DNA of 64,000 nucleotides from Octopus sinensis (taxonomy: Eukaryota): positions 25,482,001 through 25,546,000 of the forward strand of contig NC_043014.1 in the NCBI RefSeq assembly GCF_006345805.1, given 5' to 3'. The notes beneath the pieces were generated by a model, which was not told where the DNA came from, did no database searches, and saw nothing but the letters and a program-made list of their open reading frames with translations. The position numbers and the translations under genes were made by a program. This document shows, piece by piece, positions 2 to 48,638 of this stretch. Positions within the stretch are counted from its first letter, which is position 1. Each line of letters begins with the position of its first letter.

Positions 2-3000
2 CATTGTATCTTCAGTGGAAAAACGACTTTGATTGGTTTCTTGAGTTTTGAAAGAACTTTTTTGTTGGTTATGGTCTAACTCTTTGGTATTGAGGTGTAG
101 GATTGGCTTTAAAACAGACCCTACTTTGCACTGAATGTTCCAAATGGATTTGGAAGAATCTTGAAAAACTTTTTCTGTTCTTCTAATGGAACTATGGGAA
201 ATGGAGGAAGACAATGAAGAGTAAGCAGAAGAGGAATGAATATTAGAAATAGAAGAGTCTCTTTCGGAAGACTTCTTAAACTGAACCTTCAAACTTGATG
301 CATGTGTCCCGTTAAGAAATTTTTGTCCTTTAGAAAATGTGTAAGAAACTGCTGCTGTACCATGGCGGTTGTGTGTCTTCAAGTGTCCCATCAAATTAGA
401 CTTTTGCGAAAAGGTACGCTGACATAGGCCACATCCATATGGCTTTTCTCCAGTGTGCACTCGAGTGTGTCGATTTCGATCAGAGGATGTGAAAAATGCC
501 TTATCACAGTAATCGCAGTGGTAGGGTCGTTCACCTGTATGTGTGCGGAGATGGTAACGCAAGTGGGAAGACTGTGAAAATGTACGGAAACAGATTTCAC
601 ACTGGTTTGGGGACTTCTCCTCAGAGATTTTTTTATTCCCAGCCACTATAGGTTGAGATGGTGCTGACTGTTCTTTCTCATTTGTCTTGGTAACTGGCAC
701 AAGCTTTTCAACTAAAACTACATCAGATTTTTCCTTTACCAAGTCACATACTTTTTCCTCTGTTGCAACATTTTCTGGATCTTTATCTGACAAACTTAGA
801 GATTTGAGGAGGTTGCTAGTTTCCTTGCTAGTTTCTGTTGTTTGTGGATCAGATGGCTGCTCTTCCATCAAATCAACATTTCCAGTGGTTACATTCATGG
901 TTCCCAAGCTCCTGTTCAGTCCTTTGTTGTTATAGAAGCTTTCATTAGATTTGAATACTGATCTAGATGGAATTCTGCCAGATAAATCTTTCTGTGAAGC
1001 AGATGTTGATATTGTAGAATCAAAGGCTTTAACATTTGTGGCCCAATTCAGGTTATCTTCTTGAGGTTGTTGGTTACACTGGTGTTTAGAAAGCTGAATG
1101 CTATCTGGGAAAGACTTTTCACACACAGCACAGCTTAGTGTAGCTGACAAATATGTGGCCGTATCAGATAGTGAATCATCAGAAATAGTGACTGTTCCAG
1201 ATTTCACAGGCAGCCATGATGAATCTGACTTATTGGATGCATGTGGAGTGGACGTTGTCTTTTCTTTTTTCTTGTACTCTGGTTTTTTCACCAAACTTGG
1301 ATGAGAAGCTTTGAGATGATTAGTGAGACTGTAATAATTAGTAAACTTCTGTTGACAAGCAGGACAACAGAAATTGATTTCAGAATGATTGGTGATTGTA
1401 GAGTGAGTTTGTTGATGTCTTGCCAACATAGAAGAAGTTGAAAATTTTTTTGGGCATAAACGACATCGATAAGGTCTATCACCAGTGTGAGAGCGAGTGT
1501 GGATGAGTAAATTTGAACGCTGAGTGAATCTTTTTCGGCAATGGTTGCATTTGAAAGGTTTCTCACCTGTATGAACTCGTGTGTGACGTTTCAGATCAGA
1601 TGATGTGAAGAAAGCTTTCCCACAATGTCTGCAGCCATAAGGTCTTTCTCCAGTGTGTGTTCGAATGTGATAAGTTAAGTGACATGCCTGAACAAAAGTA
1701 CGACCACATATTTCACACTGGTGTTGTTTACGATTATTTTCTAAACTTGGTGAACTTATTGGAAATTTTGGCCTTATTTTGCCTTCTTGATTTAATGAAG
1801 TTTTAGATTGTTTCATAACAGCCTCGGGGTCATTCCCTGATTCATCCACAGCAGCTTGTGTAATTGTAGTGTCTTTCTGTATGGATGCATTTTGAAAATT
1901 TACCTGCCTTTTCAAACTTTTTACCTGATTTTTAGATTTAGCCTTGGATTTTGTAGCATTATAAGCTACACTTTGTGTATTTTCATTGCATCTTTTGTAA
2001 GCTGGGGATTCTTCAGTAAATGCAGAGTCACCAGTTAACCAACTGTGTCCTGCAATAGAGATCTCTAGAGGTTTAACACTTGGCCTATAGTTGTGAGTGG
2101 TCTTAGAAATTAATCTATTGGACTTAGACCTGTTGAATAATTCAACTTCTTTGGAATCAGAAGCATCTTTTCTCTCCTGTGAGACAGAGTCTGCATCAAA
2201 TTTTGATGTAGATGTTATGTAGGTCGATGATGGATTGTCTTGAAACTTTTTGTCTCCTTTATTAAGTTGCCAATGACCAGATCTAACCTGGAGAAGTGTT
2301 ATTGGTTGAATTGTATTTTCTTTTCTGTGTCTGTCACTCTTCTTATGCACTACAACATGCTGACCAAGACTAGAGAGGTGTTGAAAGCGTTCTAAACACA
2401 TACTACATTGAAATAATTTATTGCCAGGATTCTCCATGTTATTTTGTCTTTGGTATAACTTTTTAGACAAGGAAATGGTGAACTTGTTGGGATAATATGT
2501 TCTATTTTGGGTTTCAACATTACTGACACCAGGCTCAGCAGAATGTTTCACACTGAATGTATGTTGTCTTCCAGCATAGAGTTTCTTATGGTGCCTAACC
2601 TGAACAAGGCTGGTTGTTACCCAACAGCATACATTGCACACGTACTTGCAGATTGAAGTGTGTTTCTTCAAATGCAGTAATAAAAAGACATTGAGATAGA
2701 ACCGACGAGAACAGTAGCCACATCTGAATGGCTTACGTTGTCTATGTCTTGAAGAATGTTGTCTGAGTGCAGATCTGGTGAAAAAGGATTTTGAGCAGAC
2801 TTTACAGGAATAATGTTTCTGCTCATTATGAGTCATGATGTGATTGATCAAAAGGCTGGAGTGGTCAAAGGACTTCATACAAAATGGACATTGGAAACCA
2901 CTATACTGCAAACGAGGTGCTAATGTTGTCATCATACTGACTAATTTCTTTGAACCAACTGGATCCTCAGATTCTACAGAAGCTGGTAAAGATGTAAGAT

Positions 3001-6000
3001 ACATGTTACCATCATTGCTGACATATGTGCTAAGATCTAAAGTAATATTTTCTGAAGGCTCTGCCTTATTTGAAGGGGATTCATTGCAACTGCTATTTTT
3101 TGTTTCACTGTAGGAGTTAGTTATCACTTCTCCTTTATCTGCATTATCTTTTCCATCAACTATCTCTTTGGGTTCTTCCTCAACATGGGACTGTGGCTGA
3201 GGAGAACATAAGTAACCTGCCATAGTTTCAAGGGGTTTTGAAGTTTTCTTCTCATGTACTTGGACAGCTGATTCAGAAGAATTTTCAAGTTCACAATGGG
3301 TTGCCATATGATATTTGAGAAAGTTTGCCCGTGAAAAGCACATTTGGCATATATTGCATTTGTAAGGCTTTTCACCTGTATGTAATCTTCGATGACGATA
3401 TAACATGGCTGTTGAGAAGAATTCACGGGGACAGAAATCACATTTGTATGGCTTTACACCTGAATGTGTTTTTACATGAGAAATAAGATTAGAGCTTTGA
3501 TTGAATCTTTTCTCACAATAGTCACAAGCAAAAGGTTTCTCACCAGTGTGTATGCGTGTGTGACGCTTGAGATCTGAGGATGTAAGGAACTCTTTACCAC
3601 ATGTATTGCAAATATGACAACGTTTCTGTTTGGTAATTCCACTTCTGACATTTAGATGGTTATGAGCATGTGTGGTGTGCTTGGAAAGTAGATGAATGCT
3701 GCTGAAAGTTCGCAAACACAGTTTGCATTTATAGCTTTTGGTTGTATGACATGCAAGATGTTTACTGAGAAGTGGAAAGTCTGAAAAGGATTTATTGCAG
3801 TGACTGCATCTGTATGGCCGTTGTGATGTAGCATGAGTGCGTAAATGGGACACAAGATTTGAATTCTGTGTAAAACGCTTGGCACAAAACTCACATTTGA
3901 AAGGTTTTTCCCCAGTATGAATTCGGGTGTGGCGATTCAAATCGGACGGCTTAGCAAAGGCCTTGCCACAATATACACACTTATATGGACGGTCACCAGT
4001 GTGTGTCCTGATGTGATATGTCAGGTGATTGGCCTGTTGGAATGTCTTACTACACAACATACATGCATACTGGTTCTCTTGGCCACACAACTTATCATCA
4101 CCTTGGATAGAAGTTCTCTTCAAATCCCTGCCATCATCTACGTTAGCATTATTTACAGTGGTTATACTGTTATCTGTACAGTTGCTCTCTCTAAAACATA
4201 CACCATTTGATGATGATAAAGACAGGGGAACAACATTTCCCATTTCATTTTTATTGGCATCAGTGAGTAGGTACCCTTTACTAGCTACTTTGTTAGTACC
4301 ATCATGTGACTCAGATGACAAACATGATTCTTCATCAGCACAAATTTTAGATGCAAGTTTATCCTGAAGTGGAGAAGACAAATCAATGCAGGTAATTTCT
4401 GGGTCAATTTTCAGTCTTTTGTCTGACCTTTCAGAATAGTTACAGTTTAATGTGTTAATATCTACAAATTCTTCACACAAGTAGGAAGACTCACCACTGT
4501 TTGTTACATTATTAGAATCTCTGTCAAAAGCAAAACTTTCTAGATTTGTTAGAGCCTGCATGTCAGGTATTTGGCATTGAATATCCTCTGATATACAAGG
4601 ACTGCTACTTGGAATGTTCAGTGCAGAAACAGCAAAGGAATTAGGAATAAGACTGCTGCACCCTGAGGACTGTTCACTACTATCATCACTAACATAGATA
4701 GGCAAAGTATTACAGTTGGTGGAACCAATGTCTCTGCTAGTTTCCCATTCCTCCAAAATTCCTTCACTTGTTACTAAACATGTGGGAATTTCATGAACTC
4801 TTGTTGATGAATCCCTGCCAGAGTTCACTTCTATATCCTTGCCTAATAATGACACTGGTTCTGTACCTGAGTAAGATGTTGAAACAGTTGAGTTACCTGA
4901 AGGTGTTAACAGCATCATATCATTCGTGCTAGTTAAATCAGCCACATTTGCAGTCTCCTCTAATTTTTGGCAGTTGTCAAAATCTAATTCAACTTTTATG
5001 TTGGATCCAGTCTGGCTTGGAGTTTGACTGATGCTATTTTTCACTATTCTACTACTTGTTTTTGTTTCATTGACACCGGCTTCTTTAGGATTTTCTACTC
5101 CTACAACTTTATCACTATTATATAACAATGACTGGAGGTTGTCAGCTAATGCAATTTCACTCTCAGAACTACTACTGCTTGTGTTGTTACTGCATGAGCT
5201 TTCTTTGCTGAAGTAACCTGCAGCATCAGAAGAAGATTGGACCACTGGCTCCTCGGTAATGACTTTGTCGTCAAAATCAAGTAGCACTGTTTTAACAGTA
5301 AATTGGTTATCAGGTGCCAAATCCTGAAGGACAGACTTACGATCTACTTCATCTTTTGTGACCACTAAAGGTAGTGGATCAACATCCATACTGCTATCAC
5401 ACAAGTCATGTTCCACCTTGAGATGTTGCACAAGATTACTGACTTCAAGAAACTGTCTTGAACAAAGGCTGCACATTAATGGGTTTTGACCTTCAACTGG
5501 GAAATTTTCAGCTGTGGTAGGATTTTCTTTTGCCACATTTGTTGGTGAAGAACTGATACCAGACATTAAGCTAGACAGCAGCTGTTTATCCCAACTACTA
5601 ACAGTTGATGGGAAGAAGTCAAGAGGAACCACTTTATCTTCTAGTTTCTTTACCTCAACTTGTTTAGAAACAATATTTAACAGTCCCTGAGTGCCTTTAT
5701 TATTTCTGTTAGTAGTAATATTATTATTGTTGATTGTATCATTAGGTGGGCTCTTGGTAGTACTGCTTTTTTTAGCAATGTCACCTTTGTTACTGATAAT
5801 GTTGTCAGTAGGAGTGCTGTTATCATTGTGGTGTACACGAATGTGTTGTGTAAGGGCAGCCCGTGTTGTGAAACCAATACTACACTGCATGCAGTGGTGT
5901 GGATAAACCTTGGTATGAGTGCGCAAATGAACTTTAAGGTTGGAGTTCTGTGTGAACCTCTTTCCACAGAAACGACATTGAAATGGCTTCTCTCCAGTGT

Positions 6001-6415
6001 GAATGCGAGTGTGTCTGTTAAGATCAGATGAAGTGGCAAAACGTTTTTCACAAAACATGCATCCATACGGCCTCTCACCTGTGTGCATTCGAACATGGAT
6101 TGTCAGCATAACTCCACTTACAAATACTTTGCCACAAATGTTACATTCATGGTGACCTCGTTTGCTGTTATCACTATGCTGTGACACTTTATGTGAATTG
6201 AGAAGTTCAACACTGCTAAAAGTTTTATTGCATTTTTGGCAGCAGTATTGTTTAGTAATTGGTGAGTGGTGGCCAGCACTTTCTTCATTTTCAGCAGCAT
6301 GGGTGCGCATATGACTTACAAGGTTATTCTTCCGACTAAAACGGCGAGAACACCACTTGCAGAAAAATGGCCTCTCCCCAGTGTGTACACGTGTGTGCTG
6401 GTTAAGATTAGACAT
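2..6415 (-). CDS. Giant multi-cluster C2H2 zinc-finger protein (ZNF-A), >=2138 aa, about 30 fingers, one uninterrupted reading frame, 3'-partial (runs off window start)
   Basis: Hand translation of the minus strand gives tandem C-x2-C-x12-H-x3-H fingers with TGEKP/TGERP linkers, e.g. [28 protein letters not shown] (~6450), FKCEFCAKRFTQNSNLVSHLRTH (~3900), YGCGLCQRTFSQKSNLMGHLKTH (~440). Clusters lie at ~6450-5830, ~4070-3295, ~2895-2345, ~1720-1395 and ~603-372, with single fingers near 5450 and 1100. All share one frame, open at base 2. Spacers were not fully hand-checked, but the ORF track lists no ATG-to-stop piece in this frame, implying no internal stop. The frame stays open upstream to TAA at 6603-6601; first in-frame ATG is 6415. 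Confidence 0.93.
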   Translation of the reverse strand, partial: MSNLNQHTRVHTGERPFFCKWCSRRFSRKNNLVSHMRTHAAENEESAGHHSPITKQYCCQKCNKTFSSVELLNSHKVSQHSDNSKRGHHECNICGKVFVSGVMLTIHVRMHTGERPYGCMFCEKRFATSSDLNRHTRIHTGEKPFQCRFCGKRFTQNSNLKVHLRTHTKVYPHHCMQCSIGFTTRAALTQHIRVHHNDNSTPTDNIISNKGDIAKKSSTTKSPPNDTINNNNITTNRNNKGTQGLLNIVSKQVEVKKLEDKVVPLDFFPSTVSSWDKQLLSSLMSGISSSPTNVAKENPTTAENFPVEGQNPLMCSLCSRQFLEVSNLVQHLKVEHDLCDSSMDVDPLPLVVTKDEVDRKSVLQDLAPDNQFTVKTVLLDFDDKVITEEPVVQSSSDAAGYFSKESSCSNNTSSSSSESEIALADNLQSLLYNSDKVVGVENPKEAGVNETKTSSRIVKNSISQTPSQTGSNIKVELDFDNCQKLEETANVADLTSTNDMMLLTPSGNSTVSTSYSGTEPVSLLGKDIEVNSGRDSSTRVHEIPTCLVTSEGILEEWETSRDIGSTNCNTLPIYVSDDSSEQSSGCSSLIPNSFAVSALNIPSSSPCISEDIQCQIPDMQALTNLESFAFDRDSNNVTNSGESSYLCEEFVDINTLNCNYSERSDKRLKIDPEITCIDLSSPLQDKLASKICADEESCLSSESHDGTNKVASKGYLLTDANKNEMGNVVPLSLSSSNGVCFRESNCTDNSITTVNNANVDDGRDLKRTSIQGDDKLCGQENQYACMLCSKTFQQANHLTYHIRTHTGDRPYKCVYCGKAFAKPSDLNRHTRIHTGEKPFKCEFCAKRFTQNSNLVSHLRTHATSQRPYRCSHCNKSFSDFPLLSKHLACHTTKSYKCKLCLRTFSSIHLLSKHTTHAHNHLNVRSGITKQKRCHICNTCGKEFLTSSDLKRHTRIHTGEKPFACDYCEKRFNQSSNLISHVKTHSGVKPYKCDFCPREFFSTAMLYRHRRLHTGEKPYKCNICQMCFSRANFLKYHMATHCELENSSESAVQVHEKKTSKPLETMAGYLCSPQPQSHVEEEPKEIVDGKDNADKGEVITNSYSETKNSSCNESPSNKAEPSENITLDLSTYVSNDGNMYLTSLPASVESEDPVGSKKLVSMMTTLAPRLQYSGFQCPFCMKSFDHSSLLINHIMTHNEQKHYSCKVCSKSFFTRSALRQHSSRHRQRKPFRCGYCSRRFYLNVFLLLHLKKHTSICKYVCNVCCWVTTSLVQVRHHKKLYAGRQHTFSVKHSAEPGVSNVETQNRTYYPNKFTISLSKKLYQRQNNMENPGNKLFQCSMCLERFQHLSSLGQHVVVHKKSDRHRKENTIQPITLLQVRSGHWQLNKGDKKFQDNPSSTYITSTSKFDADSVSQERKDASDSKEVELFNRSKSNRLISKTTHNYRPSVKPLEISIAGHSWLTGDSAFTEESPAYKRCNENTQSVAYNATKSKAKSKNQVKSLKRQVNFQNASIQKDTTITQAAVDESGNDPEAVMKQSKTSLNQEGKIRPKFPISSPSLENNRKQHQCEICGRTFVQACHLTYHIRTHTGERPYGCRHCGKAFFTSSDLKRHTRVHTGEKPFKCNHCRKRFTQRSNLLIHTRSHTGDRPYRCRLCPKKFSTSSMLARHQQTHSTITNHSEINFCCPACQQKFTNYYSLTNHLKASHPSLVKKPEYKKKEKTTSTPHASNKSDSSWLPVKSGTVTISDDSLSDTATYLSATLSCAVCEKSFPDSIQLSKHQCNQQPQEDNLNWATNVKAFDSTISTSASQKDLSGRIPSRSVFKSNESFYNNKGLNRSLGTMNVTTGNVDLMEEQPSDPQTTETSKETSNLLKSLSLSDKDPENVATEEKVCDLVKEKSDVVLVEKLVPVTKTNEKEQSAPSQPIVAGNKKISEEKSPNQCEICFRTFSQSSHLRYHLRTHTGERPYHCDYCDKAFFTSSDRNRHTRVHTGEKPYGCGLCQRTFSQKSNLMGHLKTHNRHGTAAVSYTFSKGQKFLNGTHASSLKVQFKKSSERDSSISNIHSSSAYSSLSSSISHSSIRRTEKVFQDSSKSIWNIQCKVGSVLKPILHLNTKELDHNQQKSSFKTQETNQSRFSTEDTM

Positions 6416-6968
6416 TGTAGAGAACACCTTATCACATGATCTGCATTGATAAGCCTTGTAGCCAGGGTAGATCTGCAGATATTTATTAAAATGGCCAGAA
6501 TAGTTAATGATTTGTAAGAAATACTTGCAAGTATAATCCACATGTACCGTCAGTAGGAAATGGCAAATGTGAGATATTTTAAGAGGAATTTATATGATGA
6601 TTAGCAACAGATATTGGTTGTTGTAGTTTGGGTGGAGTCAATGGCTGTTCCCTTTGGACGGGATCCATATATGAGAAGGTCATAACTAAGCAACTGGAAG
6701 AGTTTTCATGGCTAAGAAGTTAAAGCACATCACTTGGCCCCATATGTTGTAGGAGTGAGAGTAAAAAGACTTTACAGCAAGAGTGTAGCTGTTGCTACGT
6801 AGAAGATTGATGATGGGAATGTTTTCTGAATCTAGCTGCAACAGATGTTGATCAGACTTGACTGCATGGTAGTGAGACAGTATTGCCATGTGTATCCATG
6901 ACAACACGTCTGACTGGATGCAGCCAGTCATGATTACTTTCAACAAGTCACAATAAGAAAGTGTAAAC

Positions 6969-6990
6969 CTGCAGCTGAGAAAAAATAGCA
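6969..6990 (-). promoter_or_regulatory. Candidate tandem splice acceptors upstream of ZNF-A
   Basis: Minus strand reads ctattttttctcAG-ctgcAG-gtttacac: pyrimidine tract followed by two AGs 6 nt apart. Confidence 0.35.
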
Positions 6991-7100
6991 AGGTTTGCAT
7001 CCCGTAAAAACACTGGGTTCATCCCATTTGAATTCATGTCTTGTTAACAGTAGAGATTCATTTTTGACTAATCATCTTAAAAATTACATAACATTGGTAT

Positions 7101-9600: not shown

Positions 9601-10639
9601 ATTCATATAATGTATTGGGATTTAAAAGTCAATGGGATAATTTTCATGTAAATGGTCACATGGATTCTATTTTATGACATCACCTTAACACTTTTCTTTG
9701 GATTTTGCTGAGATTGGACACGCTGAGCAATTTTGCACAGAGGATGGCATTAAGGGGGAGAGAAATAAACAAACATCACTCTCAACGGGTTGAGGTACAC
9801 CCTGTAGTTTGACTGCGAATTCAGATGGTCCAGTATGTAGGAGTATGTCAAAAGCATTAACCAGATAAAATCCCTGCCAGATAAAATCCAAACCAGATAT
9901 AACATCTTAATGGGTAATAGTTGGCATGGGGAATGTAGAAGATTTCATTACAAGGTCAGAGGTAGGCTTAACTTCAACACAGAAAAAAACACGAGCAAAG
10001 CTGGGTCCAACAGCTAGTTATACATATATACAGCTGATACATTTACCCCTACTAGATTAAGTGTATTGGCTGTATTATTATCAATCCCACAGAGATAAAA
10101 TACAAGCCTGACTACACTTGAATTTGAACTAATATACTGTAATGTTTGTAGTATGGACAACCCTTGCCTTTTGTTTGACCTAACTGACTCAGTCACATTC
10201 TCAGTATATTATTGGTATACATTTTACTTATTCAAAGAAACAAGGAAAGCTAAAATGAACACTTGGCAAAATGTATATTCAGAAATACAAATCCTTTGGG
10301 AGTTGATTCCATAATATTCTAGTGTGACTCTTATAATCTGAGATAATTCTATCACTTGAAAAATGTTAAATAACTCATGAGCATATAGATGGGTGGGAAG
10401 GCTCTCTGTTGTGACCTAAACTCTTAGAATTGCAGTCAATTCTCTCTCAATTCACACCCATTATGCATGAAATAAAGACAGCATGACTAGATGTTGAATG
10501 TTGTTTCCATTCCTCATATGTCTACTCACCAGACAAAAGTTTATGGGACTAATGATAACATTGACTAAACCATCAGGTGCTGTTATAGTCTGCTGGTCAC
10601 AATGTGTTTCCAATTTTGTCTTGACTGCGCCATTCTCTT

Positions 10640-15078: not shown

Positions 15079-16372
15079 CGAGGGATGTCCAAAAAGTAAT
15101 GCCCCTGACCCACTTCCCATAGCAGTAGAGCAACAAAACATGGCACAGTTATTAGTCTTTTTCTACATAGGAACTACCCAGAGTTACGCATTTCTCCCAT
15201 CGTTTGATGCAGCTCTGGAGACCGTTTTTGTAGAAGACCGCAGCTTGGTCCTCCAACCACGACATGACTTCAGAAATCAAGGCTGCATCATCTGGGAAAC
15301 GCTTTCCTTTCAAAAACAACTTCATGGCTGGGAAGAGGTGAAAATCAGAGGGTGCAAGGTCAGGAGAGAAGGGGGGATGGGGGAGGAGTGCATAGCCGCA
15401 CGCCTGAGCTTCTGATCTGGCGACACGCGAGTTGTGGACCGGAGCGTTGTCCTGTAGGAGGAGGATGCCTTTGCTGATCTTGCCCCGCCTCTTGATTTTG
15501 ATAGCTTCTCTTAATTTCCTCAAAAGTGAAGCATAATAGGCTCCTGTAATTGTGGTACCCTTTGCCAGGAAATCTGTCATCACTACTCTGTCCTGGTCCC
15601 AGAAGACTGTGAGCATGACCTTGCCAGCGGAGGGCTGCACTCTTGCCTTCTTTGGAGGAGGTGAGTCACGGTGCTTCCACTGCATTGACTGGGCTTTGGT
15701 CTCTGGATCATAGTGATGGACCCAGGTTTCATCCTGTGTAATCAGTCTTTTGAAAAATTTTGACTCATCTTCTTGGCACATCTCCAAATTTCATCCTCGA
15801 GCACTCGACGCGTTCTTGCTTCTGGAAAGGTGTGAGCAACCTGGTAATCCATCTGGCAAATACCTTTTGCATATGCAAATGGTCATGAATGATAGTTTCC
15901 ACAGACCCAGTACTAATCTCGACCTCATGGGCTATTTGGTGAATAGTTATGCGTCGATCTTCCAAAATGGCAGCCTCAACTTGACGGACAGATGCCTCAT
16001 CAATGGCAGAAGCGGGGCGACCAGATCTGGGAGCTGTTTCCACAGAGTTCCGACCATGTTTGAATTCACGATGCCAGCGTTTTACAAGGTCATATGATGG
16101 GGCATCATCACCATAAGTTATTTTCATTTCATCAAAAGTCTCCCATGGTGTGCGTCCTTTCAAATACAAAAACCGGATCACTGCTCAACACTCAACAGGC
16201 TCCATTTCACACTTGACTCAGTTCAAACACCTGTAAATCAGAAACCACAATTAGTTCAGAGCTGTAATTTGCCACTTAATCTATAGAGATATAAATAATT
16301 GCACATGCAAAATTTCAGCTAGATCAAACAACTGCAAGTGGGTCAGGGGCATTACTTATTGAACGTCCCTCG
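15079..16372 (-). mobile_element. Full-length mariner (DD34D) DNA transposon, 1294 bp, 37-bp TIRs, TA target duplication
   Basis: Left TA|CGAGGGATGTCCAAAAAGTAATGCCCCTGACCCACTT; right end reverse complement TA|CGAGGGACGTTCAATAAGTAATGCCCCTGACCCACTT (3 mismatches). TA at 15077-15078 and 16373-16374. Confidence 0.96.
15152..16205 (-). pseudogene. Mariner transposase with one nonsense codon and one frameshift
   Basis: ATG at 16205 gives MEPVEC*AVIRFLYLKG (TGA at codon 7, likely from CGA). HTH domain in ORF 15765-16181, +1 frameshift near 15790. Catalytic ORF 15152-15787 has TQDETW, QDNAPVH and HPPFSPDLAPSD, with 34 residues between the second and third Asp. Confidence 0.93.
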
Positions 16373-19649: not shown

Positions 19650-22600
19650 GCAGGTAGGGGAGCTCCGAAAGAGGTCTCGGGAAGTAGCATCCCTGCCTTC
19701 CCAAGCTAGTTTTCCACCACATTTCTTAAAAATCATGACCACTCATGTCTAGAAACTGAGGTATGCTCCCTGTAGGAAATGTCTAGAACCTGAGGTATGC
19801 TTCCTGTAGGAAATCCAGCTCCAAAAAAAACTCATGACAATAGCAAAGAAGCATGGGCACCAGCCAGCCCAAAGATTGGGGTGAGCTGCACCTGTCTACC
19901 TCAAAAGGAAAGTGCAAATCGTCATCTTGGGTCATGCAAGCATGACTTGCCTTATGATGGCTGATGACCTGAGAAGCTTGGAGTGAGGTTGGAAAGTTGG
20001 AATGTGGGAAGTCTGCATAGAAGGGGAACTGAAGTGTGTGGGGAATTGAGGTGGAGGATGGTGGATGTGTGCTGTGTGCAAGAGGCTAGGTGGAAAAGCC
20101 AGGGTGCAAGATTTGTAGGGGTCAAGAGAAGAAGGTACAAGTTGTGGGGGTTGGGAAATTGGCAAGGGGACTGGAAGAGTGGGAGTTTTAGTGAAGGAAG
20201 AACTCTGTGAGAATGTAGTGGAGGTCAGGAGAAAGAGTGATAGTGATGCCAGAAGTATTAGCATTTGAGGAAGAAGTGGTGAGGGTGATTTGTGAGGATG
20301 GTCCACAAAGTGGAAAGAGGGATCACTGAGAAAGAGCGGTTCTTTGATGAAATGGCAAGAGAGCGGGACTTACATAGGATAGATGATTTGGTTTTGGGCA
20401 TGGGTGATTTTAATAGAATTGTTGGGAAATGGATCCAAGGCTTTGAGGGTGTGCATGGGGGAAACGGAATTGGGGAGAGAAATATGGAAGAAAGGATGCT
20501 GTTGAAGTTTTGCGATGAGAAGGAGTTGTGTGTGGCGAACACATGGTTAAGGAAAACATAGAAAAGGAAGGTGACTTTCAGCGCAGGAAGGAATGAGACA
20601 GATTGATTTTGTATTGGTTGGCAGGAAAAACAGAAAATATCTGAGAGATGTGAAGACAATACCAGGGGAGTTGCAGTACAGGTTGGTGGTTGCTGACTTG
20701 GATAAGAAGAAAATTAAAAAGTGTGTGAGAAAGGTAACGGTTAAAGGCATGTGACAAAGCACGTGGAAGGACGAATGGTAGGAGAGATCGAGGAGATACG
20801 TGGTGGTGGAACAAGGAGGTGAGGGATGCGATAGCAAAGAAAAAGGCACACAAAGTTTTATGTGATAATAGGACTGAGCAAATAAAAGCCTGGTATATTA
20901 ACATGAGAAATTGTACAAAGAGGGTGGTTGCGAGATCTATAAAGAAGAAAGCTGAGAAGTTGAGCAGGCTGAGTGAGAACCCAGATAGAGTGTTTAGGTT
21001 TATTAAATCAATGAAAAATAATGGAAGAGATGTTGAGGGAGGAAGATGCATGAGGGAGAGTGATTGAAAGTTGAATCTTAGTGAGAAGGACAGAGGAAGA
21101 GTTTGGAAGGAGCGTATGGAGGGAATGATAAATGAGAGAATGAATGGGATCAGATGGTGGAAGCTGCTGTGGTGAAGGAGCCAGTGGAGAGGGTTAGTCA
21201 GGAAGAAGTAGTGGAGGCAATGAAGGAAATGAAAACAAGAAAAGTAGCTGGTCCATCAGAAGTAAGTATAGAAATGATAACTGCAAGTAGAAAGATAGGG
21301 ATTGTTGTGCTGATGGAGTTCTGCCAGTGTGTGTTGGATGGAGGAGGAATGCCAGATGATTGGGCACTAAGTGTGGTGGTACTGATCTTCAAGGGAAAGT
21401 TACTGGAGCATGCAATGACGAAAAGGGTGTTGAAGAGAATTTGGAAAACAGTGGATATGGACGAGATACAATTTGGTTTTATGCCAGGAAAGGGGACAAT
21501 AGATGCAGTGTTTATTGTAAGGAGAGTGCAAGAGAAATACCAAGATAAGGAGAAAGAGTTGTACATGTGCTTTGTTGATCTGGAGAAGGCATTTGATAGG
21601 GTTTCAAGGAAGGTGATTGAGTGGGCATTAAGGAAGGTGTACTAGAGGTAATAGTGAGGGCAATGATGAGTTTGTATGAAAGGGTAAAGACAAGAGTTAG
21701 AGTTGGATCTGAGCTGTCGGAGGAGTTTGTGATGAAAGTTGGCATGCATCAGGGATCTGGGTTGTCACTGTTGTTGTTTGAAATACTGGTTGATGTGATG
21801 ACACGGAGTGCAAAAGAGGGATTGATAATAGAGATACTGTATGCAGATGACCGTGTTCTGATGAGTAAAATGATGGAGGTATTGAGGGAGAAGTTTTGGA
21901 AATGGAAGGAGGTGTTTGAAGCTAAGGGGGTGAAAGGAGAAGTATTAGTAAGATAGAGCCATGTTGTGTGTGTGGGAGGAGGGTAATGGCAAATGCGGTG
22001 TTGTGTATGAAATGGATTCATGGTAGATGTACGAAAATGAAGAAGGTGACCCCAAGGATGGCAAGAGATTTTATTTGTGGAAGATGTGAGAAAGGAGCTG
22101 GAGAGCTGGCGGAACCAGTGGAAATGCCTTGTGACAAGGTGGAAATGGTGAGAGGGTTTTGTTATTTGGGAGATAGGGTTGATGTAAGTGGTGGATGTGA
22201 AGCAACTGTGACAGCGAGAGTGAGACTTGGCTGTGTGAAGGTCAAGGAATGTGGAGCATTATTATATGGGAAAAGGTTTTCCTTGAAGATGAAAGGAAGG
22301 GTTTATCAAAGTTGCATGAGATCTGCAATGCTGTATGCAAGTGAGACATGATGTCTGAGGGAAAGTGAAATGGCAATTTTGAGAAGGACTAAGAGAGCAA
22401 TAGTGAGAGCAGTATGTGGTGTGAAACTATTGGATAAAAGGAGGGCTGAGGACTTGATGGGGATGCTGGGGCTGGAGGAATTGGTGGAACAGCTGGCAAG
22501 GGCGAATGGAGTGCAGTGGCATGGACATGTAATGAGGAGGGATGAGGATCATGTTCTAAGGAGAGTGCTTGAGTTTAAAGCAAATGAACTGCAAAAGCGA

Positions 22601-35942: not shown

Positions 35943-36042
35943 NNNNNNNNNNNNNNNNNNNNNNNNNNNNNNNNNNNNNNNNNNNNNNNNNNNNNNNNNN
36001 NNNNNNNNNNNNNNNNNNNNNNNNNNNNNNNNNNNNNNNNNN
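35943..36042. other. Assembly gap (100 N)
   Basis: Run of N; contiguity across it is not guaranteed. Confidence 1.
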
Positions 36043-37229: not shown

Positions 37230-37388
37230 ATTCATATATATATATGTATATATATGAATATATATATATGTGTATATATATATATGTGTATATATATGTG
37301 TATATATATATATGTATATATATATATATGTGTATATATATGTGTATATATATGTGTATATATATATATATGCGTATATATATATGTA

Positions 37389-37419
<31 letters not shown>

Positions 37420-37533
37420 TGTAATTATATGATGATGATTTTGATGATTTTTCCAGTTTCAGCTAATGAGCTGTGGCCATGCTGGAGCACCGCCATATAT
37501 ATGTATATATATATGTATATATATATATGTATG

Positions 37534-37575
<42 letters not shown>

Positions 37576-37578
37576 ATA

Positions 37579-37624
<46 letters not shown>

Positions 37625-37805
37625 TATTATGTATATATGTATGTATATGTATATATGTATGTATATATATATATGTATGTATATATGTATGTATATATAT
37701 ATATGTATGTATATATGTATGTATATATATATATTTGTATATATATGTATGTATATATATATATATATATGTATGTATATATATATATTTGTATGTATAT
37801 ATGTA
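37230..37805. repeat. (TA)n/(TATG)n microsatellite containing a ~60-bp CR1 3'-tip fragment at ~37435-37495
   Basis: Direct reading; embedded ccagtttcagctaatgagctgtggccatgctggagcaccgcc matches the CR1 3' ends. Confidence 0.9.
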
Positions 37806-39725
37806 TAAATCCTTAAATCCTTAAAAATGTTTTAGCCCGAAGGCCGCGGCCATGCTGGGGCACCACCTCTGAATGAGCTACACTAATTTGTGAATCCCCC
37901 TCTGATACGTGGCACTTGATCAACAAGGGAGTTTGATGCTGCTGCCCGCATCCGCGTCTCCTGTCGTGAGGTAGGCTCATCTGGGACTCCCGACAAGAGA
38001 GATCCGTTTTAGTTTTAAAGAAACCCACATCCACACCATGTAAGTCTCTCAGGCATTATGGAGGATGTTAAAGAGCTGTGGTCCTCTGAAACCCAAGCTG
38101 TTTCAGTATCTGGACCTGTATTTTGATGGTGATGTTGAATCCTTGGCACCATGCAGTGGCCCCCGTTCTGCGGTTGGAGTAACTTTGAATGCCGAAGTTT
38201 GGGACAAGACCCTCCCAGGATTTTCCAGATGTTATCACCGCATATCTCTCCCGCCTCTGCTCTAGGGAGAAGATGTTTAATACCTTCAGTCTTTCCCATA
38301 GCTGATATTTTTGCATTGAGACGATTTTCTTTGTGTGGCTTCTCTGAATTGCTTCGAGTTCTGTTGTTTTTATATTGTGTGGTGACCAAAGTTGGGAGCA
38401 GTAGTCCAAGCGGCTGAGGACGAATGTTTTCCATAGGACCATCAGTGTCTCCTTCTCTCTTGTTCTGAAAGTTCGGAGAATCCATCCAGCTAGCCATCTG
38501 CATTTTATCACACCAGATTAGCAATATGCATTTGGAAAGATGCATCATTGCTCATGTCAATGCCCAGGTCACGCACTGATTTTGACTCAGGGATTGCAAT
38601 TCTTCCTGGGCCAGTGTATCCAGTCTTCACGTCATTTACCTTTGTGTGCCAGTAGCGCAGGGCCTGGAACTTACCTGCATTAACTGCATGTTGTTGTCCT
38701 CAGCCCACCTGTATATTGTGTCCAGCTCATGTGCAGATGCACATTTTTCAGGGTTTTGTATTGCGTGGGAGACTTTTGTGTCATCTGCATAGCTAGCAAG
38801 GGTGGTCATCTTAGCAACTGAAGGGATGTCTGAAAGGGCCACTATGAACATCAGTGGCCACAAGACAGTGCCCTGTGGGACACCGCTTGTTATTTGCATT
38901 TCCTTGGAGGTGGCTCCATTGCTCACAACTGCCTGTTTTCTGTCTTTTAGGAAGTTGTGTAGCCACTCTCCAAGTTTCCCGCCTATGCCGAGACCACGCA
39001 GTTTGTGACAGATCATACCATGGTCGACTTTATCAAAGGCTTTTGCAAAGTCGAGATATATTACATCCACATTTGAGCCATTTAGTAGCTGTTTCAACAC
39101 CCAGTCATAGTGTTGCAGGAGCTGTGTTAGGCAGCCTCTACCTGGTCAAAATCCATGCTGGGTGTCAGACAGCAAGTCTTCTTCAAGGAACATGATTAGT
39201 TTCTTACGGACTATTCGTTCCATGACTTTGCTGATGTGTGAGGTCAGAGAGATAGGCCTATAATTTTTAGCATCTGCTCTGCTACCTCCCTTATGGATAG
39301 GGCATATTACCCCCTCTTTCAATTTGACTGGGAGCTTACCACATGCAAGAAAGCTCTGAAAAAGAAGCTGTAGCAGTTTTGCAAGGGCTCGTTTGCACGA
39401 TTTGAGAAGGATCGCTGGGAATCCATCAGGTCCAGCAGCTGAGTTTGTGTCAATCTCATCTATGGCTAGTGTGATATCATCTTCGATGTTGATGTACTCA
39501 ATTTTTGTCTCTTTGGCCGCAGGTAAAGTGGCAAAGAATTCTTCTGGGTTGTTTACTTGCCTGTGTCCTAGAGGTGTAGTGAACACACTTTGGAACTGTT
39601 CGTTCAGTATTTCACTTATCCTCGTGGGATTTCCTGTGAGAGAGCCATCTTTTTGGAAGAGAGGTCCTATTCTCTGGTGCACTGTGGCTGTCTCTTTGGC
39701 AAACTTAAAGAAAGCTTTAGGGTTT
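37806..39725 (-). mobile_element. 5'-truncated CR1-clade LINE with RT domain and (TTTAAGGA)n-type tail
   Basis: ORFs 39146-39682 (AAGPDGFPAILLKSC, NYRPISLTS, QHGF), 38636-39100 (VDVIYLDFAKAFDKV, SGVPQG, YADD) and 38068-38511 (LSRLDYCSQLWSP, LEQRRER); tail read as aatccttaaatccttaaaaatg on the + strand. Confidence 0.93.
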
Positions 39726-39729
39726 GATT

Positions 39730-40244
39730 TTATGTATATATGTATGTATATATTTTATGTATATATATGTATATGTATATATGTATATGTATATATGTAT
39801 ATGTAATGTATATGTATATGTATATATGTATGTGTATATATGTATGTGTATATGTATATATGTATGTGTATATGTATGTGTATATGTATGTATATATGTA
39901 TGTGTATATATGTATGTGTATATGTATATATGTATGTGTATATGTATATATGTATGTGTATATGTATATATGTATGTGTATATATATATGTATATGTATG
40001 TATATGTATTTGTATGTATATGTATGTGTATGTATATATGTATATGTATATATATGTATATGTATGTGTATGTATGTGTATGTATATGTGTGTATATGTA
40101 TGTGTATGTATATATGTATGTGTATGTATATGTATATGTGTATGTATGTATATGTGTATGTATGTATATGTATGTGTATGTATGTATGTATATGTGTATG
40201 TATGTATATGTATATGTGTATGTATGTATGTATATGTATGTATG

Positions 40245-40275
<31 letters not shown>

Positions 40276-40395
40276 GTATATATATATATATATATGTATG
40301 TATATATATATATGTATGTATATACATATATGTATGTATATATATATGTATGTATGTTATATATATGTATGTATGTATATATGTATGTATGTATA

Positions 40396-40428
<33 letters not shown>

Positions 40429-40987
40429 ATATGTATGTATGTATATATATATGTATGTATGTATGTATGTATATATGTATGTATGTATATATGTATGTAT
40501 GTATATATGTATGTATGTATATATGTATGTATGTATATATATGTATGTATGTATGTATGTATATATGTATGTATGTATATATATATATGTATATATATAT
40601 ATGTATGTATATATATATATGTATGTATGTATGTATATATATATATATGTATGTATGTATATATATGTATGTATGTATATATATATATATATGTATGTAT
40701 GTATATATATGTATGTATGTATTATATATATATATATGTATGTATGTATATATATATATATGTATGTAGTATGTATGTATATATATATATATGTATGTGT
40801 ATATATATATATGTATGTATGTATTATATATATATATGTGTATATATATATATGTATGTATGTTGTATATATATATATATGTATGTATTATATATATATG
40901 TATGTATGTATGTATATATATATGTATGTATATATATATATATGTATGTATATATTTGTATGTATGTATATATAATATGTATGTATG

Positions 40988-41020
<33 letters not shown>

Positions 41021-41278
41021 ATATATATATATGTATGTATATATGTATGTATGTATATAATATATATAATGTATGTAGATATATATATGTGTATGTATAT
41101 ATATATATATGTATGTAGATATATATATGTGTATGTATATATATATATGTGTATGTATGTATATATATATATATGTATGTATATATATATATGTATGTAT
41201 GTATGTATATATAGTATGTATATATATATATATGTATGTATATATTTGTATGTATGTATATATATATATGTATGTATG

Positions 41279-41311
<33 letters not shown>

Positions 41312-41746
41312 ATATATATATATGTATGTATATATGTATGTATGTATATATATATATATATGTATGTAGATATATATATGTGTATGTATATATATATATA
41401 TGTATGTAGATATATATATGTGTATGTATATATATATGTGTATGTATATATATATGTGTATGTATATATGTATATATATATATATTGTATATATATATGT
41501 ATATATATATACGTATATGTATATATATATATACGTATATATATATATACGTATATATATATATATGTATATATATATATACGTATATATATATATATAT
41601 ACGTATATATATATATGTATGTATATATATATATATATGTATATATATTTATGCATATATATATATACACATGTACATATATATGTGTATATTTATATAT
41701 GTCTACATGTGTGTGTTTATGTGTGTGTATATATATATATATATAT
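39730..41746. repeat. ~2-kb compound (TA)n/(TATG)n/(TATATG)n microsatellite
   Basis: Direct reading; source of the spurious 254-633 aa ORFs in the track. Confidence 0.98.
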
Positions 41747-46213: not shown

Positions 46214-46514
46214 ATGATTCCTGATCTTAATGGAAGCATTATGTCACCAGGAAGAGAACTGTTTGCCATATGTGATGGTCAACTCCTTGAAGTAAGATGT
46301 TGTGCAGATCGAGGTCCAACTAAAACTATTCACTCTAACTTTATCTTAACTTACAACACCATGGATCCTGCAAGTTTGCTTATCATAAAACACACCTGTT
46401 AACAGGTGAATAGCAGCAGTTTTGCAGAGCGAAGTGTAGTGGATTGGTGCACTACTGCTAAATATTGTATTCACTAGCTGAACTAACAGATCTCTAACTG
46501 CATTTAAAATAATC

Positions 46515-48638
46515 ATGACGAGTGCAGCACGACTAGCAGTGAATGCCCTTGCAGTTAGTGAGCAAATTAGCAGTGGTAATGTACCAACATCCAACTCTGG
46601 CAACACCAAGTCGTTCAAGTGCCAGTTTTGTGCGAAGGAGTTTCCCAAGTCTTGTAATCTGACAACGCACCTCCGCACTCACACAGGTGAGAAACCTTAC
46701 CTTTGTGGGGTGTGTCAACGCGGCTTTTCACAATCGGGCAGCCTCCATGTGCACCAGCGAACCCACACTGGAGAGAAGCCTTACAAATGTCATCTGTGTG
46801 ACAAGCGTTTCGTCCAAGTGGGCAGCCTCAGTGTGCACCTGAAGATCCACACGGGTGAGCAGCCGCACCAGTGTCATTTATGTCAGCAACGGTTTGCGCA
46901 ATCAAGTTCATTGCGAAGGCACATAAAAATCCATAAGGGCGAGAAGAACTACAAATGTAAGTTTTGCTCAAAAGACTTTGTGCAGTCATCACAACTTGTC
47001 AAACACACTCGCACTCACACTGGCGAAAAGCCATATGCATGTAAGTTCTGTGACAAAAGGTTCTCACAATCTAACTCACTTGAGATTCATCAGCGTGTAC
47101 ACACAGGCGAAAGGCCTTATAAATGTGATTTTTGTGACAAAAGATTCCCCCAGTCTTCACTGTTAACCCGTCACATTCAGGTACATACGCGTGAAAATTT
47201 CTGCAAATGTGACTTCTGTGACAAACCATTTCCTCTGCAAAGCCTCCTTGATGAACATATGCAATTACATCGAGATAACCCATATGAATGCGAATATTGC
47301 AATAAATGTTTTTCTAAAGCAACGCGACTGATGGAACATCTCAAAGAACACACAGGTGAGGAACCTTATAGGTGCAGATTCTGTGACAAAACATTCACCA
47401 GACATAGAAACTTATGCCAGCATCTCAAATTTCACACGCGGCAACGAGCACTTGTGTTCCCAGAAGTAGATAAATTCTGGGAAGAGTTGCAAGATCCTAA
47501 TGGTGTCAAGACGACGGCATCTCATGCTGCAGTTTGCGATGTACTAACGCCGTCCTGCTTCAAAGATGATAGTGATTTGTTTAAAACTATTGCAGCTGGT
47601 GCACTAAGGGAAAAGATTCAGTCAACTGATACAGATACAAGCATGGAGTTAGCTGCAGATTTAGCTACTTGTTGTAAAAATGAACAACACTTAGATGCAT
47701 GTGATGCAGCAAACAATGCAACAGCTGTGACAAATGGAAGAAATGGATACTCACCACAGATTGATACAGACACTGATAAAAAACTGGAGCTCTCTACTAC
47801 CCTACGCTGCTGCAGTGATCCACCTTCTGGAGTTTGTGATAATGCTACTGTTGAAGGCCAAAGCATTGATCAAAGTTACAAACCTCTGCAAGTTGATCTG
47901 CAAATTTCAGAACAGGCATCAAACCATGGAGAGAAAACATGCAAAGTTCTGTGTGCTCCTGCCTCCGATTCCTCTGTTGTGCACACTTACATTTCAACAT
48001 CTGAACCTGGTGCTATTACTGCTGATTTACCGACCAACTCAAAGCCAGGTGACCCAACTGCTACAGTTGTAAGTGCCACCTATCATTGTGGCGACACAAT
48101 TATCACTGGCAACTCTATGTTTGATAGTAGTACACTTCCTAAAACAAGTAGGGCATGTTTAGTGAGTCTACGTACTTGTGAACCCAGTGTATTCACAAAT
48201 GCCACAGCAGCACCACCTCCAGTTCAGCTGGAGAGGGCTATGAGCGCAGAATTAGCAGTAGTTGATCAGTTGGTATCAAACAGCCAGGCAGCAGTTCGAC
48301 ACAAAGATGGAACAGCTGTTGAGATCAGCAAACCAAACCTGTTTGAATGTGACATGGATATCAAACTTTACCTCCCAGACAGAGATGCCAACACTGTCAC
48401 TGCACACCAGCCACCACCGTCCCCTGCAATCACCACTGCCCCCTCATTGGTACCACATACTGTCCATATTCCTGCTACAATGAGAGACACCAAACGTAAA
48501 GGCTCAGAGTTGTGCACATTCACATGTAAAGGCAATATGTATATCAAACCAACTGTAACAACTCTCCCTACAGATTATGTTGAAAAAAGCCGTAGTCCTG
48601 GATCATATGACTGTGACCTTCCCTATGGTTATGGATAA
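46515..48638 (+). CDS. C2H2 zinc-finger protein (ZNF-B), 707 aa, 10 tandem N-terminal fingers plus a long T/S/D/A-rich C-terminal region, intronless CDS
   Basis: The ORF track translation shows 10 consecutive C-x2-C-x12-H-x3-H fingers with TGEKP-type linkers. An in-frame TGA at 46479 upstream supports ATG 46515 as the start. Confidence 0.95.

What the first reader, a model, noticed from the sequence alone, without database searches (positions are those of the whole stretch)
2..6600. Hidden >2100-codon, ~30-finger intronless zinc-finger ORF absent from the ORF track
Seen: a single minus-strand frame stays open from 6600 to the window edge and encodes five finger clusters separated by 100-450 aa low-complexity spacers, plus lone fingers, including a C2HC-like LSCAVC...HQC near 1100. 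The track shows only off-frame fragments because no stop is in the window. Established: octopus genomes have a large expansion of clustered C2H2-ZNF genes. Inference: an uninterrupted >6.4-kb coding stretch with this spaced, multi-cluster layout suggests a multivalent DNA/chromatin organiser rather than a simple single-site factor.
Basis: partly seen in the sequence, partly recalled or inferred. Interest (0 to 1): 0.72.

Follow-up and report, generated by a model that had tools for sequence, protein, structure and literature searches.

The report
Annotated giant octopus zinc-finger gene
The long open frame is real, but it is the single coding exon of an already catalogued Octopus gene for a 2,276-residue protein with 33 C2H2 zinc fingers in separated clusters, conserved among three Octopus species: an ordinary member of a very large gene family.

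Summary
The minus-strand frame is open from 6589 to the window edge: 2,196 codons, with a chance probability of about 1e-64. It carries 29 canonical C2H2 fingers in five clusters plus two lone fingers, and two degenerate fingers.

It is not a hidden gene. The ORF track omits it only because it runs off the window. The window is Octopus sinensis chromosome CM016876.1, and the exact protein (2,276 aa, one uninterrupted CDS starting at ATG 6415) is already in NCBI and UniRef. Models 97-100% identical exist in O. vulgaris and O. bimaculoides. The protein runs 138 aa past the window and adds four more fingers.

Selection is purifying: dN/dS is 0.07 in fingers and 0.40 in spacers, and all indels are in-frame. 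The spacers are Ser/Thr/Asn-rich, and the one modelled is predicted unfolded. Pfam finds only zinc-finger-type families.

Two details are new:
- A finger pair with near-identical recognition helices (xxSDLxR + QxSNLxx) recurs six times. That fits multivalent binding of one short motif, but this is inference only.
- The annotated start cuts finger 1 in half, and O. vulgaris has a stop just upstream.

It is not a ZNF236 orthologue. No orthologue outside Octopus was found among public proteins; other cephalopod genomes could not be searched. Interest is low.

The parts
2..6415 (-). In-window part of the annotated CDS. It runs from ATG 6415-6413 (residue 59 of the open frame) to the window edge. 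The CDS continues 417 nt beyond position 1 (138 codons plus stop, 4 more fingers).
   Evidence: P0121 (2,276 aa, O. sinensis) matches the window exactly. L003 gene 10001-16831 is a single uninterrupted CDS.
6416..6589 (-). In-frame open extension upstream of the annotated ATG (58 codons, no ATG). Codons 47-58 encode the first half of finger 1 (YQCRSCDKVFST).
   Evidence: O. vulgaris has TAA at codon 48 (window-equivalent 6448-6446); O. sinensis and O. bimaculoides have CAA.
6473..6474 (-). Candidate splice-acceptor AG (..aatatctgcag|ATC), phase 0 before codon 40. Not verified.
   Evidence: Read directly from the sequence. The AG is kept in O. bimaculoides and O. vulgaris. No transcript evidence.
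6590..6592 (-). In-frame TAA that closes the open frame on its 5' side.
5828..6451 (-). Finger cluster A, F1-F7 (2 + 1 + 4 fingers). Contains repeated pair 1 (TSSDLNR/QNSNLKV, 6067-5915).
   Evidence: Pfam.
5408..5479 (-). Lone finger F8.
4070..5407 (-). Spacer 1 (446 aa). Ser/Thr/Asn-rich, no domain, predicted unfolded.
   Evidence: composition over all spacers. (AlphaFold2 mean pLDDT 27.5, no residue above 50). (a 306-aa piece of it, 5407-4490, has no homologue). (no non-finger Pfam family).
3293..4069 (-). Finger cluster B, F9-F17 (5 + 4 fingers). Contains repeated pairs 2 (3985-3833) and 3 (3616-3464).
   Evidence: Best solved-structure matches are ZNF568, Aart, PRDM9 and CTCF arrays.
2660..2896 (-). 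Finger cluster C, F18-F20 (atypical helices), followed by a degenerate finger at 2644-2576.
2345..2413 (-). Lone finger F21.
1301..1723 (-). Finger cluster D, F22-F26. Contains repeated pair 4 (1639-1487).
1076..1138 (-). Degenerate 'C2HC-like' finger LSCAVCEKSFPDSIQLSKHQC (C-x2-C-x12-H-x1-C).
371..607 (-). Finger cluster E, F27-F29. Contains repeated pair 5 (523-371). Pair 6 and cluster F (4 fingers) lie beyond the window edge.

Best explanation
Positions 2-6589 (minus strand) are most of the single large coding exon of a real, already annotated Octopus gene. The window is from O. sinensis chromosome CM016876.1.

Shown:
- The gene encodes a 2,276-aa Krüppel-type C2H2 zinc-finger protein.
- The extended frame has 33 canonical fingers: six multi-finger clusters (7, 9, 3, 5, 3, 4) and two lone fingers.
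- The clusters are joined by 82-447-aa Ser/Thr/Asn-rich linkers.
- The exon contains no other Pfam domain type.
- The gene is under purifying selection, very strong on the fingers and their recognition helices.

Inferred:
- It most likely acts as a nuclear, sequence-specific DNA-binding factor in which each canonical TGEKP-linked cluster reads a short site.
- The linkers are probably disordered.
- A finger pair with almost the same specificity residues (xxSDLxR then QxSNLxx, often preceded by QxxHLxY) recurs in six places. The protein is therefore predicted to contact several copies of one similar 6-9-bp core at once. By the classical -1/3/6 recognition code, recalled from memory, that core is roughly 5'-NAA-GCN-(NGA)-3'. 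This would make it a multivalent binder of reiterated or clustered motifs.
For: - The open frame of 2,196 codons has log10 P of about -64 by chance.
- Pfam zf-C2H2 and zf-H2C2_2 score far above their cut-offs, and only zinc-finger-type families match.
- The exact protein is in NCBI, UniRef and nr. It is called as one uninterrupted CDS in O. sinensis, O. vulgaris and O. bimaculoides.
- The window is 100% identical to the O. sinensis locus.
- O. sinensis versus O. bimaculoides: dS 0.046. dN/dS is 0.24 overall, 0.067 in fingers and 0.40 in spacers. Both are below neutral, with binomial P of 2e-14 and 9e-5.
- All 5 indels are whole codons.
- Only 2 of 231 recognition-helix residues differ, one of them in the truncated finger 1.
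- The six xxSD[LR]xR + QxSNLxx pairs compare with none among 8,599 fingers of 371 other hit proteins.
- The three-finger modules containing these pairs are 39-64% identical in protein and 46-61% in DNA, so the duplications are old and the helices have been retained.
- The closest solved structures are DNA-bound arrays: ZNF568, Aart, PRDM9 and CTCF.
- Spacer 1 has AlphaFold2 mean pLDDT 27.5. The spacers are 35% S+T+N+Q and show no self-similarity.
Against: - There is no expression, localisation or binding evidence of any kind.
- The DNA motif comes from a rule of thumb recalled from memory, not from a trained predictor.
- Several fingers (F3, F12, F13, F18-F21, F26) have atypical helices or linkers. 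They may bind RNA or protein, or nothing.
- The N-terminus is uncertain, so an upstream exon carrying an effector domain cannot be excluded.
- The low pLDDT of the spacer rests on a three-sequence alignment, which weakens it as evidence for disorder.
Confidence: 0.8

Rival explanations
1. It is a lineage-specific product of the octopus C2H2 expansion. Its job would be to recognise and silence transposable elements or satellite repeats, like a KZFP or FiNZ factor but without a recognisable repressor domain in this exon.
For: - No orthologue outside three Octopus species appears in a 5.8-billion-protein collection. The next-best hit scores 1,197 bits against 5,010 for self.
- A 306-aa piece of spacer 1 has no homologue at all.
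- The surroundings are rich in transposable elements: mariner and reverse-transcriptase fragments.
- Octopus ZNF ORFs as a class were predicted to match TE consensus sequences (PMC10547256).
- Octopus-specific C2H2 expansion clusters are documented (PMC12513265).
Against: - Recognition helices are almost invariant between O. sinensis and O. bimaculoides, and finger dN/dS is 0.067. That is the opposite of an arms-race signature.
- It is not part of a tandem array of close paralogues. The only other ZNF in the 64 kb is about 40% identical.
- The internal duplications are old.
- No KRAB, SCAN, BTB, ZAD or FiNZ-type domain was found.
Confidence: 0.2
2. It is the octopus orthologue of the conserved bilaterian multi-cluster protein ZNF236.
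For: The overall design is similar: about 30 fingers in several clusters separated by long linkers, about 2,000 aa, and no effector domain. ZNF236-type proteins appear among the hits. P0358 is 'zinc finger protein 236-like' from Diadema setosum.
Against: - ZNF236-type proteins (P0358, P0359, P0364) share a [9,4,4,4,4,4-5] layout. They also share helix signatures (KPSDLVR-VKSTLxS-TxGSLxV-TSGxxKx and KSSHLKQ-SSGVLKA-TxGSLKR) across a sea urchin and unnamed Logan assemblies.
- The octopus protein has a [7,1,9,3,1,5,3,4] layout and none of those signatures.
- Collinear BLAST chain scores are no better for P0359 (474) than for unrelated giant ZNFs (515-609).
Confidence: 0.04
3. Many of the fingers do not bind DNA. 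The protein would be mainly an RNA-binding or protein-scaffolding factor, with the fingers serving as interaction modules along a disordered chain.
For: There are lone and atypical fingers (F8, F21, F26, and F18-F20 with hydrophobic helices such as LNVFLLL) and two degenerate fingers. There is a weak zf-C2H2_jaz (double-stranded-RNA-binding finger) match. Linkers are long and apparently disordered.
Against: Most fingers (about 22 of 33) sit in arrays with canonical 5-residue TGEKP-type linkers and polar or basic helix positions typical of DNA readers. The best structural relatives are DNA complexes. The jaz match has no stretch that passes on its own.
Confidence: 0.1
4. It is a chance or decaying ORF (pseudogene) or an assembly artefact.
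For: The annotated start truncates finger 1, and O. vulgaris carries a stop just upstream. This shows some erosion at the 5' end. No transcript evidence was obtained.
Against: P(open by chance) is about 1e-64. The same 6.8-kb frame is intact in three independent assemblies, with only in-frame indels and dN/dS well below 1.
Confidence: 0.01

Closest known systems
The gene's own public models: P0121 (O. sinensis), P0001 (O. vulgaris), P0122 (O. bimaculoides)
   Same: Identical or 97% identical protein. Same single uninterrupted CDS and same start at the window's ATG 6415.
   Different: None: this is the same gene. The models start inside finger 1, so they may be 5'-truncated. Source names were withheld by the tools.
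ZNF236 family (for example 'zinc finger protein 236-like' of Diadema setosum, P0358)
   Same: About 30 Krüppel-type fingers in several clusters separated by long linkers, about 1,900 aa, and no recognisable effector domain. It works like this in layout.
   Different: The cluster pattern is [9,4,4,4,4,5] against [7,1,9,3,1,5,3,4]. The conserved helix signatures are absent from the octopus protein, and there is no preferential collinear similarity. Not an orthologue.
Other giant multi-cluster Octopus ZNFs: LOC106883442 (P0021, 2,405 aa; Argonauta counterpart P0011; unnamed P0023) and LOC115211127 (P0082, 2,780 aa)
   Same: The design is the same. Each has an N-terminal cluster, a lone finger about 80-120 aa later, a linker of about 420-450 aa, and then repeated 4-6-finger modules whose helices recur from cluster to cluster.
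   Different: The repeated helix sets differ (xxSDLxV-ISRNLxA-QKSALTV in P0021). Identity is only 25-30%, and any cluster aligns to any cluster. At most they are distant paralogues.
Structurally solved DNA-binding arrays: ZNF568 (5v3m), designed Aart (2i13), PRDM9 (5v3g), CTCF (7w1m)
   Same: Canonical C2H2 fingers with TGEKP linkers. Cluster B matches at E values from 6e-81 to 3e-44.
   Different: Those are single contiguous arrays, and ZNF568 and PRDM9 carry KRAB or PR-SET domains. This protein has six separated arrays and no such domain in the exon.

Membership tests
Krüppel-type C2H2 zinc-finger proteins (Pfam PF00096 / PF13465) | C-x2-4-C-x12-H-x3-5-H motif, repeated | tested here: met
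   29 canonical motifs in the window and 33 in the full frame.
Krüppel-type C2H2 zinc-finger proteins (Pfam PF00096 / PF13465) | Profile score above the curated cut-off | tested here: met
   zf-C2H2 scores 334 bits (cut-off 25.2). zf-H2C2_2 scores 391 bits (cut-off 40).
Krüppel-type C2H2 zinc-finger proteins (Pfam PF00096 / PF13465) | Conserved TGEKP-type 5-residue linkers between adjacent fingers | tested here: met
   Most within-cluster gaps are exactly 5 residues (HTGEKPF/Y, HTGERPY).
Krüppel-type C2H2 zinc-finger proteins (Pfam PF00096 / PF13465) | Zinc-dependent sequence-specific DNA binding | not testable with these tools
   Supported only by analogy to the solved DNA complexes that are the best PDB matches.
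ZNF236 orthology group | Cluster layout of 9 fingers followed by repeated 4-finger clusters | tested here: not met
   ZNF236-type proteins are [9,4,4,4,4,4-5]. This protein is [7,1,9,3,1,5,3,4].
ZNF236 orthology group | Shared recognition-helix signatures of the 4-finger clusters | tested here: not met
   KPSDLVR/VKSTLxS/TxGSLxV and KSSHLKQ/SSGVLKA/TxGSLKR are conserved in P0358, P0359 and P0364 but absent here.
ZNF236 orthology group | Preferential collinear similarity or reciprocal best hit | tested here: not met
   The chain score is 474 for P0359, against 515-609 for unrelated giant ZNFs. ZNF236-type proteins are not among the top hits.
Effector-domain ZNF classes (KRAB, SCAN, BTB/POZ, ZAD, FiNZ) | N-terminal effector domain | tested here: inconclusive
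   None is in the 2,196-codon frame. An upstream exon cannot be excluded, because the 5' end is unresolved.
Octopus lineage-specific C2H2 expansion clusters (PMC12513265) | Restricted to octopods, with many close paralogues | tested here: inconclusive
   Orthologues were found only in three Octopus species. No close paralogue was found either: the best other octopus hits are 25-30% identical. Other cephalopod genomes could not be searched.
Octopus lineage-specific C2H2 expansion clusters (PMC12513265) | Tandem genomic clustering with related ZNF genes | tested here: not met
   Only one other ZNF ORF lies in the 64 kb (46482-48635, + strand). It is about 40% identical and has a different architecture.

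The most novel reading that the evidence does not exclude
The gene is confined to the genus Octopus, or to Octopodidae. Its six iso-specific finger pairs, strung on disordered linkers, let one molecule bridge several copies of the same short motif. That would make it a dedicated organiser or compactor of a reiterated DNA element (a satellite or TE family) in octopus chromatin. It would be a cephalopod-specific architectural factor evolved independently of CTCF-type proteins.
Probability: 0.1. Interest if true: 0.5.

Novelty: already known. Interest (0 to 1): 0.15.

Why it matters
It matters little as a discovery. The gene is already catalogued and belongs to the best-known gene-family expansion of octopus genomes.

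Its value is mainly practical:
- It shows that the 'ORF track' silently drops ORFs that run off a window edge.
- It flags a probable 5' annotation problem: the start codon lies inside finger 1, and there is a stop polymorphism or substitution in O. vulgaris.

The six-fold recurrence of one finger pair gives a cheap, testable hypothesis about multivalent DNA recognition. That could be of modest interest to people studying cephalopod ZNF expansions.

Tried and rejected
1. Searching the N-terminal 330 aa for transcript-derived or fragmentary models that would reveal an upstream exon. It returned only generic ZNFs of 42% identity or less, so it was uninformative.

2. Searching a 306-aa finger-free piece of spacer 1 for fragmentary orthologues. 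There were zero hits.

3. An exhaustive HMMER search of 1.84 billion cluster representatives with residues 1101-1624, which cover atypical cluster C and its spacers. All best stretches fell on the three fingers and none on the spacers. The gene's own cluster was not listed, so this search cannot speak to close orthologues.

4. The ZNF236 orthology idea, which came from memory of its layout. It was rejected after comparing cluster layouts, helix signatures and collinear chains.

5. The upstream same-frame ORF at 7018-6689 as a possible 5' coding exon. It is separated from the main frame by stops, its sequence does not look protein-like, and it was not pursued.

6. Self-BLAST of finger-masked spacers. 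The spacers share no similarity with each other, so only the finger modules were duplicated, or spacer similarity has decayed.

7. Albertin et al. 2015 (PMC4795812) could not be read because it is not held. The 2025 cephalopod C2H2 paper says nothing on exon structure or ZNF236.

Full report
**Observation.** Translating the minus strand of the first 9 kb shows one frame with no stop from 6589 down to position 2, which is 2,196 codons. The next-longest open stretch there is 141 codons. An in-frame TAA sits at 6592-6590. From the local base composition, the chance of 2,196 stop-free codons is about 1e-64.

A C-x2-4-C-x12-H-x3-5-H scan finds 29 canonical fingers in the window. There are five multi-finger clusters (7, 9, 3, 5 and 3 fingers) and two lone fingers, with spacers of 82-447 aa. 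There are also two degenerate fingers.

Pfam reports zf-C2H2 (334 bits) and zf-H2C2_2 (391 bits), and only zinc-finger-type families at E ≤ 0.01. The ORF lister does show only off-frame fragments of 92-139 aa, because by design it omits ORFs that run off the window. The only corrections are the boundary (6589, not 6600) and the finger counts.

**Identity.** A search of 5.8 billion proteins returned a 100%-identical 2,276-aa protein (P0001, 5,010 bits). Its 90% cluster has three members, all held by NCBI, UniRef and nr. They map as follows:
- O. vulgaris, GCA_951406725.2 OX597833.1
- O. bimaculoides, GCA_001194135.2 CM046620.1
- O. sinensis, GCA_006345805.1 CM016876.1

The window is 100% identical over 16.4 kb to the O. 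sinensis locus, so that is its source. In all three genomes the gene is called as one uninterrupted CDS of 6.8 kb. The gene is thus not hidden; it is an existing public model.

**Is it a functional coding gene?** Between O. sinensis and O. bimaculoides dS is 0.046. dN/dS is 0.24 overall, 0.067 in finger-plus-linker residues and 0.40 in the spacers. Both partitions have significantly fewer non-synonymous changes than neutrality predicts, with P = 2e-14 and 9e-5. All five indels are whole codons. Flanking non-coding DNA is 85-90% identical with many indels, against 97-99% in the CDS.

Only 5 residues differ within the 33 fingers, and only 2 of 231 recognition-helix positions differ. One of those two is in the truncated finger 1. 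This is a constrained gene. It does not look like a decaying ORF, and it does not show an arms-race pattern on its specificity residues.

**The 5' end.** The annotated Met (residue 59 of the open frame) lies inside finger 1. The two cysteines and the hairpin of that finger (YQCRSCDKVFST) are encoded in frame just upstream. That upstream stretch has no ATG between the TAA at 6592 and 6415.

A plausible acceptor (ctgcag|ATC, AG at 6474-6473, phase 0) precedes codon 40, and its AG is kept in all three species. However, the O. vulgaris assembly has TAA instead of CAA at codon 48, one codon before the first cysteine. Two readings remain:
- The public models are 5'-truncated, and the O. vulgaris change is a polymorphism or a recent loss.
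- Translation really starts at 6415, and the half-finger is a relic.

'Intronless' is therefore true of the annotated CDS but unproven for the gene. A protein search with the N-terminal 330 aa found no fragmentary or transcript-derived models that could settle it.

**Architecture and likely mechanism.** The fingers are the canonical DNA-reading kind. Within clusters the gaps are mostly exactly five residues (TGEKP-type). The best solved relatives of cluster B are the ZNF568, Aart, PRDM9 and CTCF arrays, at E values from 6e-81 to 3e-44.

The spacers total about 1,400 aa. They are 15% Ser and 35% S+T+N+Q, and have no self-similarity. A 306-aa piece of spacer 1 has no homologue, and AlphaFold2 gives the whole of spacer 1 a mean pLDDT of 27.5 with no residue above 50. 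The shallow alignment is a caveat. Flexible disordered tethers are the most likely reading.

The most distinctive feature is a finger pair with recognition helices xxSD[LR]xR followed by QxSNLxx. It occurs six times, five of them in the window, and in three places is preceded by QxxHLxY. No such pair occurs among 8,599 fingers of the 371 other proteins retrieved. The three-finger modules containing these pairs are only 39-64% identical in protein and 46-61% in DNA. The duplications are therefore old, and the specificity residues have been retained.

From the classical -1/3/6 recognition code, which I recall from memory and did not compute, each pair would read roughly 5'-NAA-GCN-3'. An NGA triplet would be added where the third finger is present. 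The inference is a multivalent protein that can engage several copies of one short motif.

**Comparison with known families.** It is a member of the Krüppel-type C2H2 class: motif, linkers and profile scores are all met. It resembles ZNF236 in layout but is not its orthologue. ZNF236-type proteins include P0358, named 'zinc finger protein 236-like' in Diadema setosum. They share a [9,4,4,4,4,4-5] layout and conserved helix signatures that are absent here. Collinear BLAST chains are no better to P0359 (474) than to unrelated giants (515-609).

Octopus has other giant multi-cluster ZNFs with the same design principle: P0021/P0011/P0023 and P0082. They use different repeated helices and are only 25-30% identical.

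Apart from the three Octopus models, the best hit in the protein collection is a gecko poly-ZNF at 1,197 bits. No orthologue is therefore annotated elsewhere, including in Argonauta, whose proteins are in the collection. An exhaustive profile-free search with cluster C and its spacers matched only generic fingers. Cephalopod genomes themselves could not be searched with the tools, so the gene's age is open.

Published work documents the large, partly octopus-specific C2H2 expansions (PMC12513265). It also predicts TE targeting for octopus ZNF ORFs as a class (PMC10547256). This gene's conserved helices and lack of tandem close paralogues make it an atypical candidate for that role.

**Verdict.** The finding is a correct reading of the sequence but an ordinary object: an already catalogued, selectively constrained, giant multi-cluster C2H2 gene. 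Two details are modestly new. One is the six-fold iso-specific finger pair. The other is the ambiguous 5' end, including the O. vulgaris stop. Interest is low.

Noticed in passing
window 46482-48635 (+): A second zinc-finger ORF, 718 codons open. It has 10-11 canonical C2H2 fingers in its first 320 residues, then a finger-free tail of about 400 aa. Its fingers are about 40% identical to the big gene's, so it is not a tandem duplicate.
   Followed up: partly
window-equivalent 6446-6448; L001 (O. vulgaris) about 9968-9970: O. vulgaris has TAA where O. sinensis and O. bimaculoides have CAA, one codon before the first cysteine of finger 1. This lies in the in-frame stretch upstream of the annotated start codon.
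   Followed up: partly
window 6606-7000: The roughly 400 bp directly upstream of the open frame are 92-97% identical between O. sinensis and O. bimaculoides, as conserved as the CDS. Further upstream identity drops to 85-90% with indels. This may be a 5' UTR or promoter, or the end of an intron.
   Followed up: no
window 15155-16184 (-): Remnants of a mariner/Mos1-type transposase: Transposase_1 (PF01359, E = 8e-24) and HTH_48 (PF17906), in two adjacent frames.
   Followed up: partly
window 38639-39145 (-) and 21136-21642 (+): Reverse-transcriptase (RVT_1) fragments, presumably from LINE-type retroelements. The 20-22 kb region also has a strong GC skew (0.63).
   Followed up: no
window 39731-41746, 37234-37807 and 35943-36042: A 2-kb (TATA/TACA)n microsatellite with GC about 0.19, a 570-bp (AT)n-type array, and a 100-N assembly gap.
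   Followed up: no
(representative library): The gene's own 50% cluster did not appear among the top 150 hits of the exhaustive search, although a self-match should have scored highest. That library apparently lacks or withholds it, so its negative result says nothing about close orthologues.
   Followed up: no
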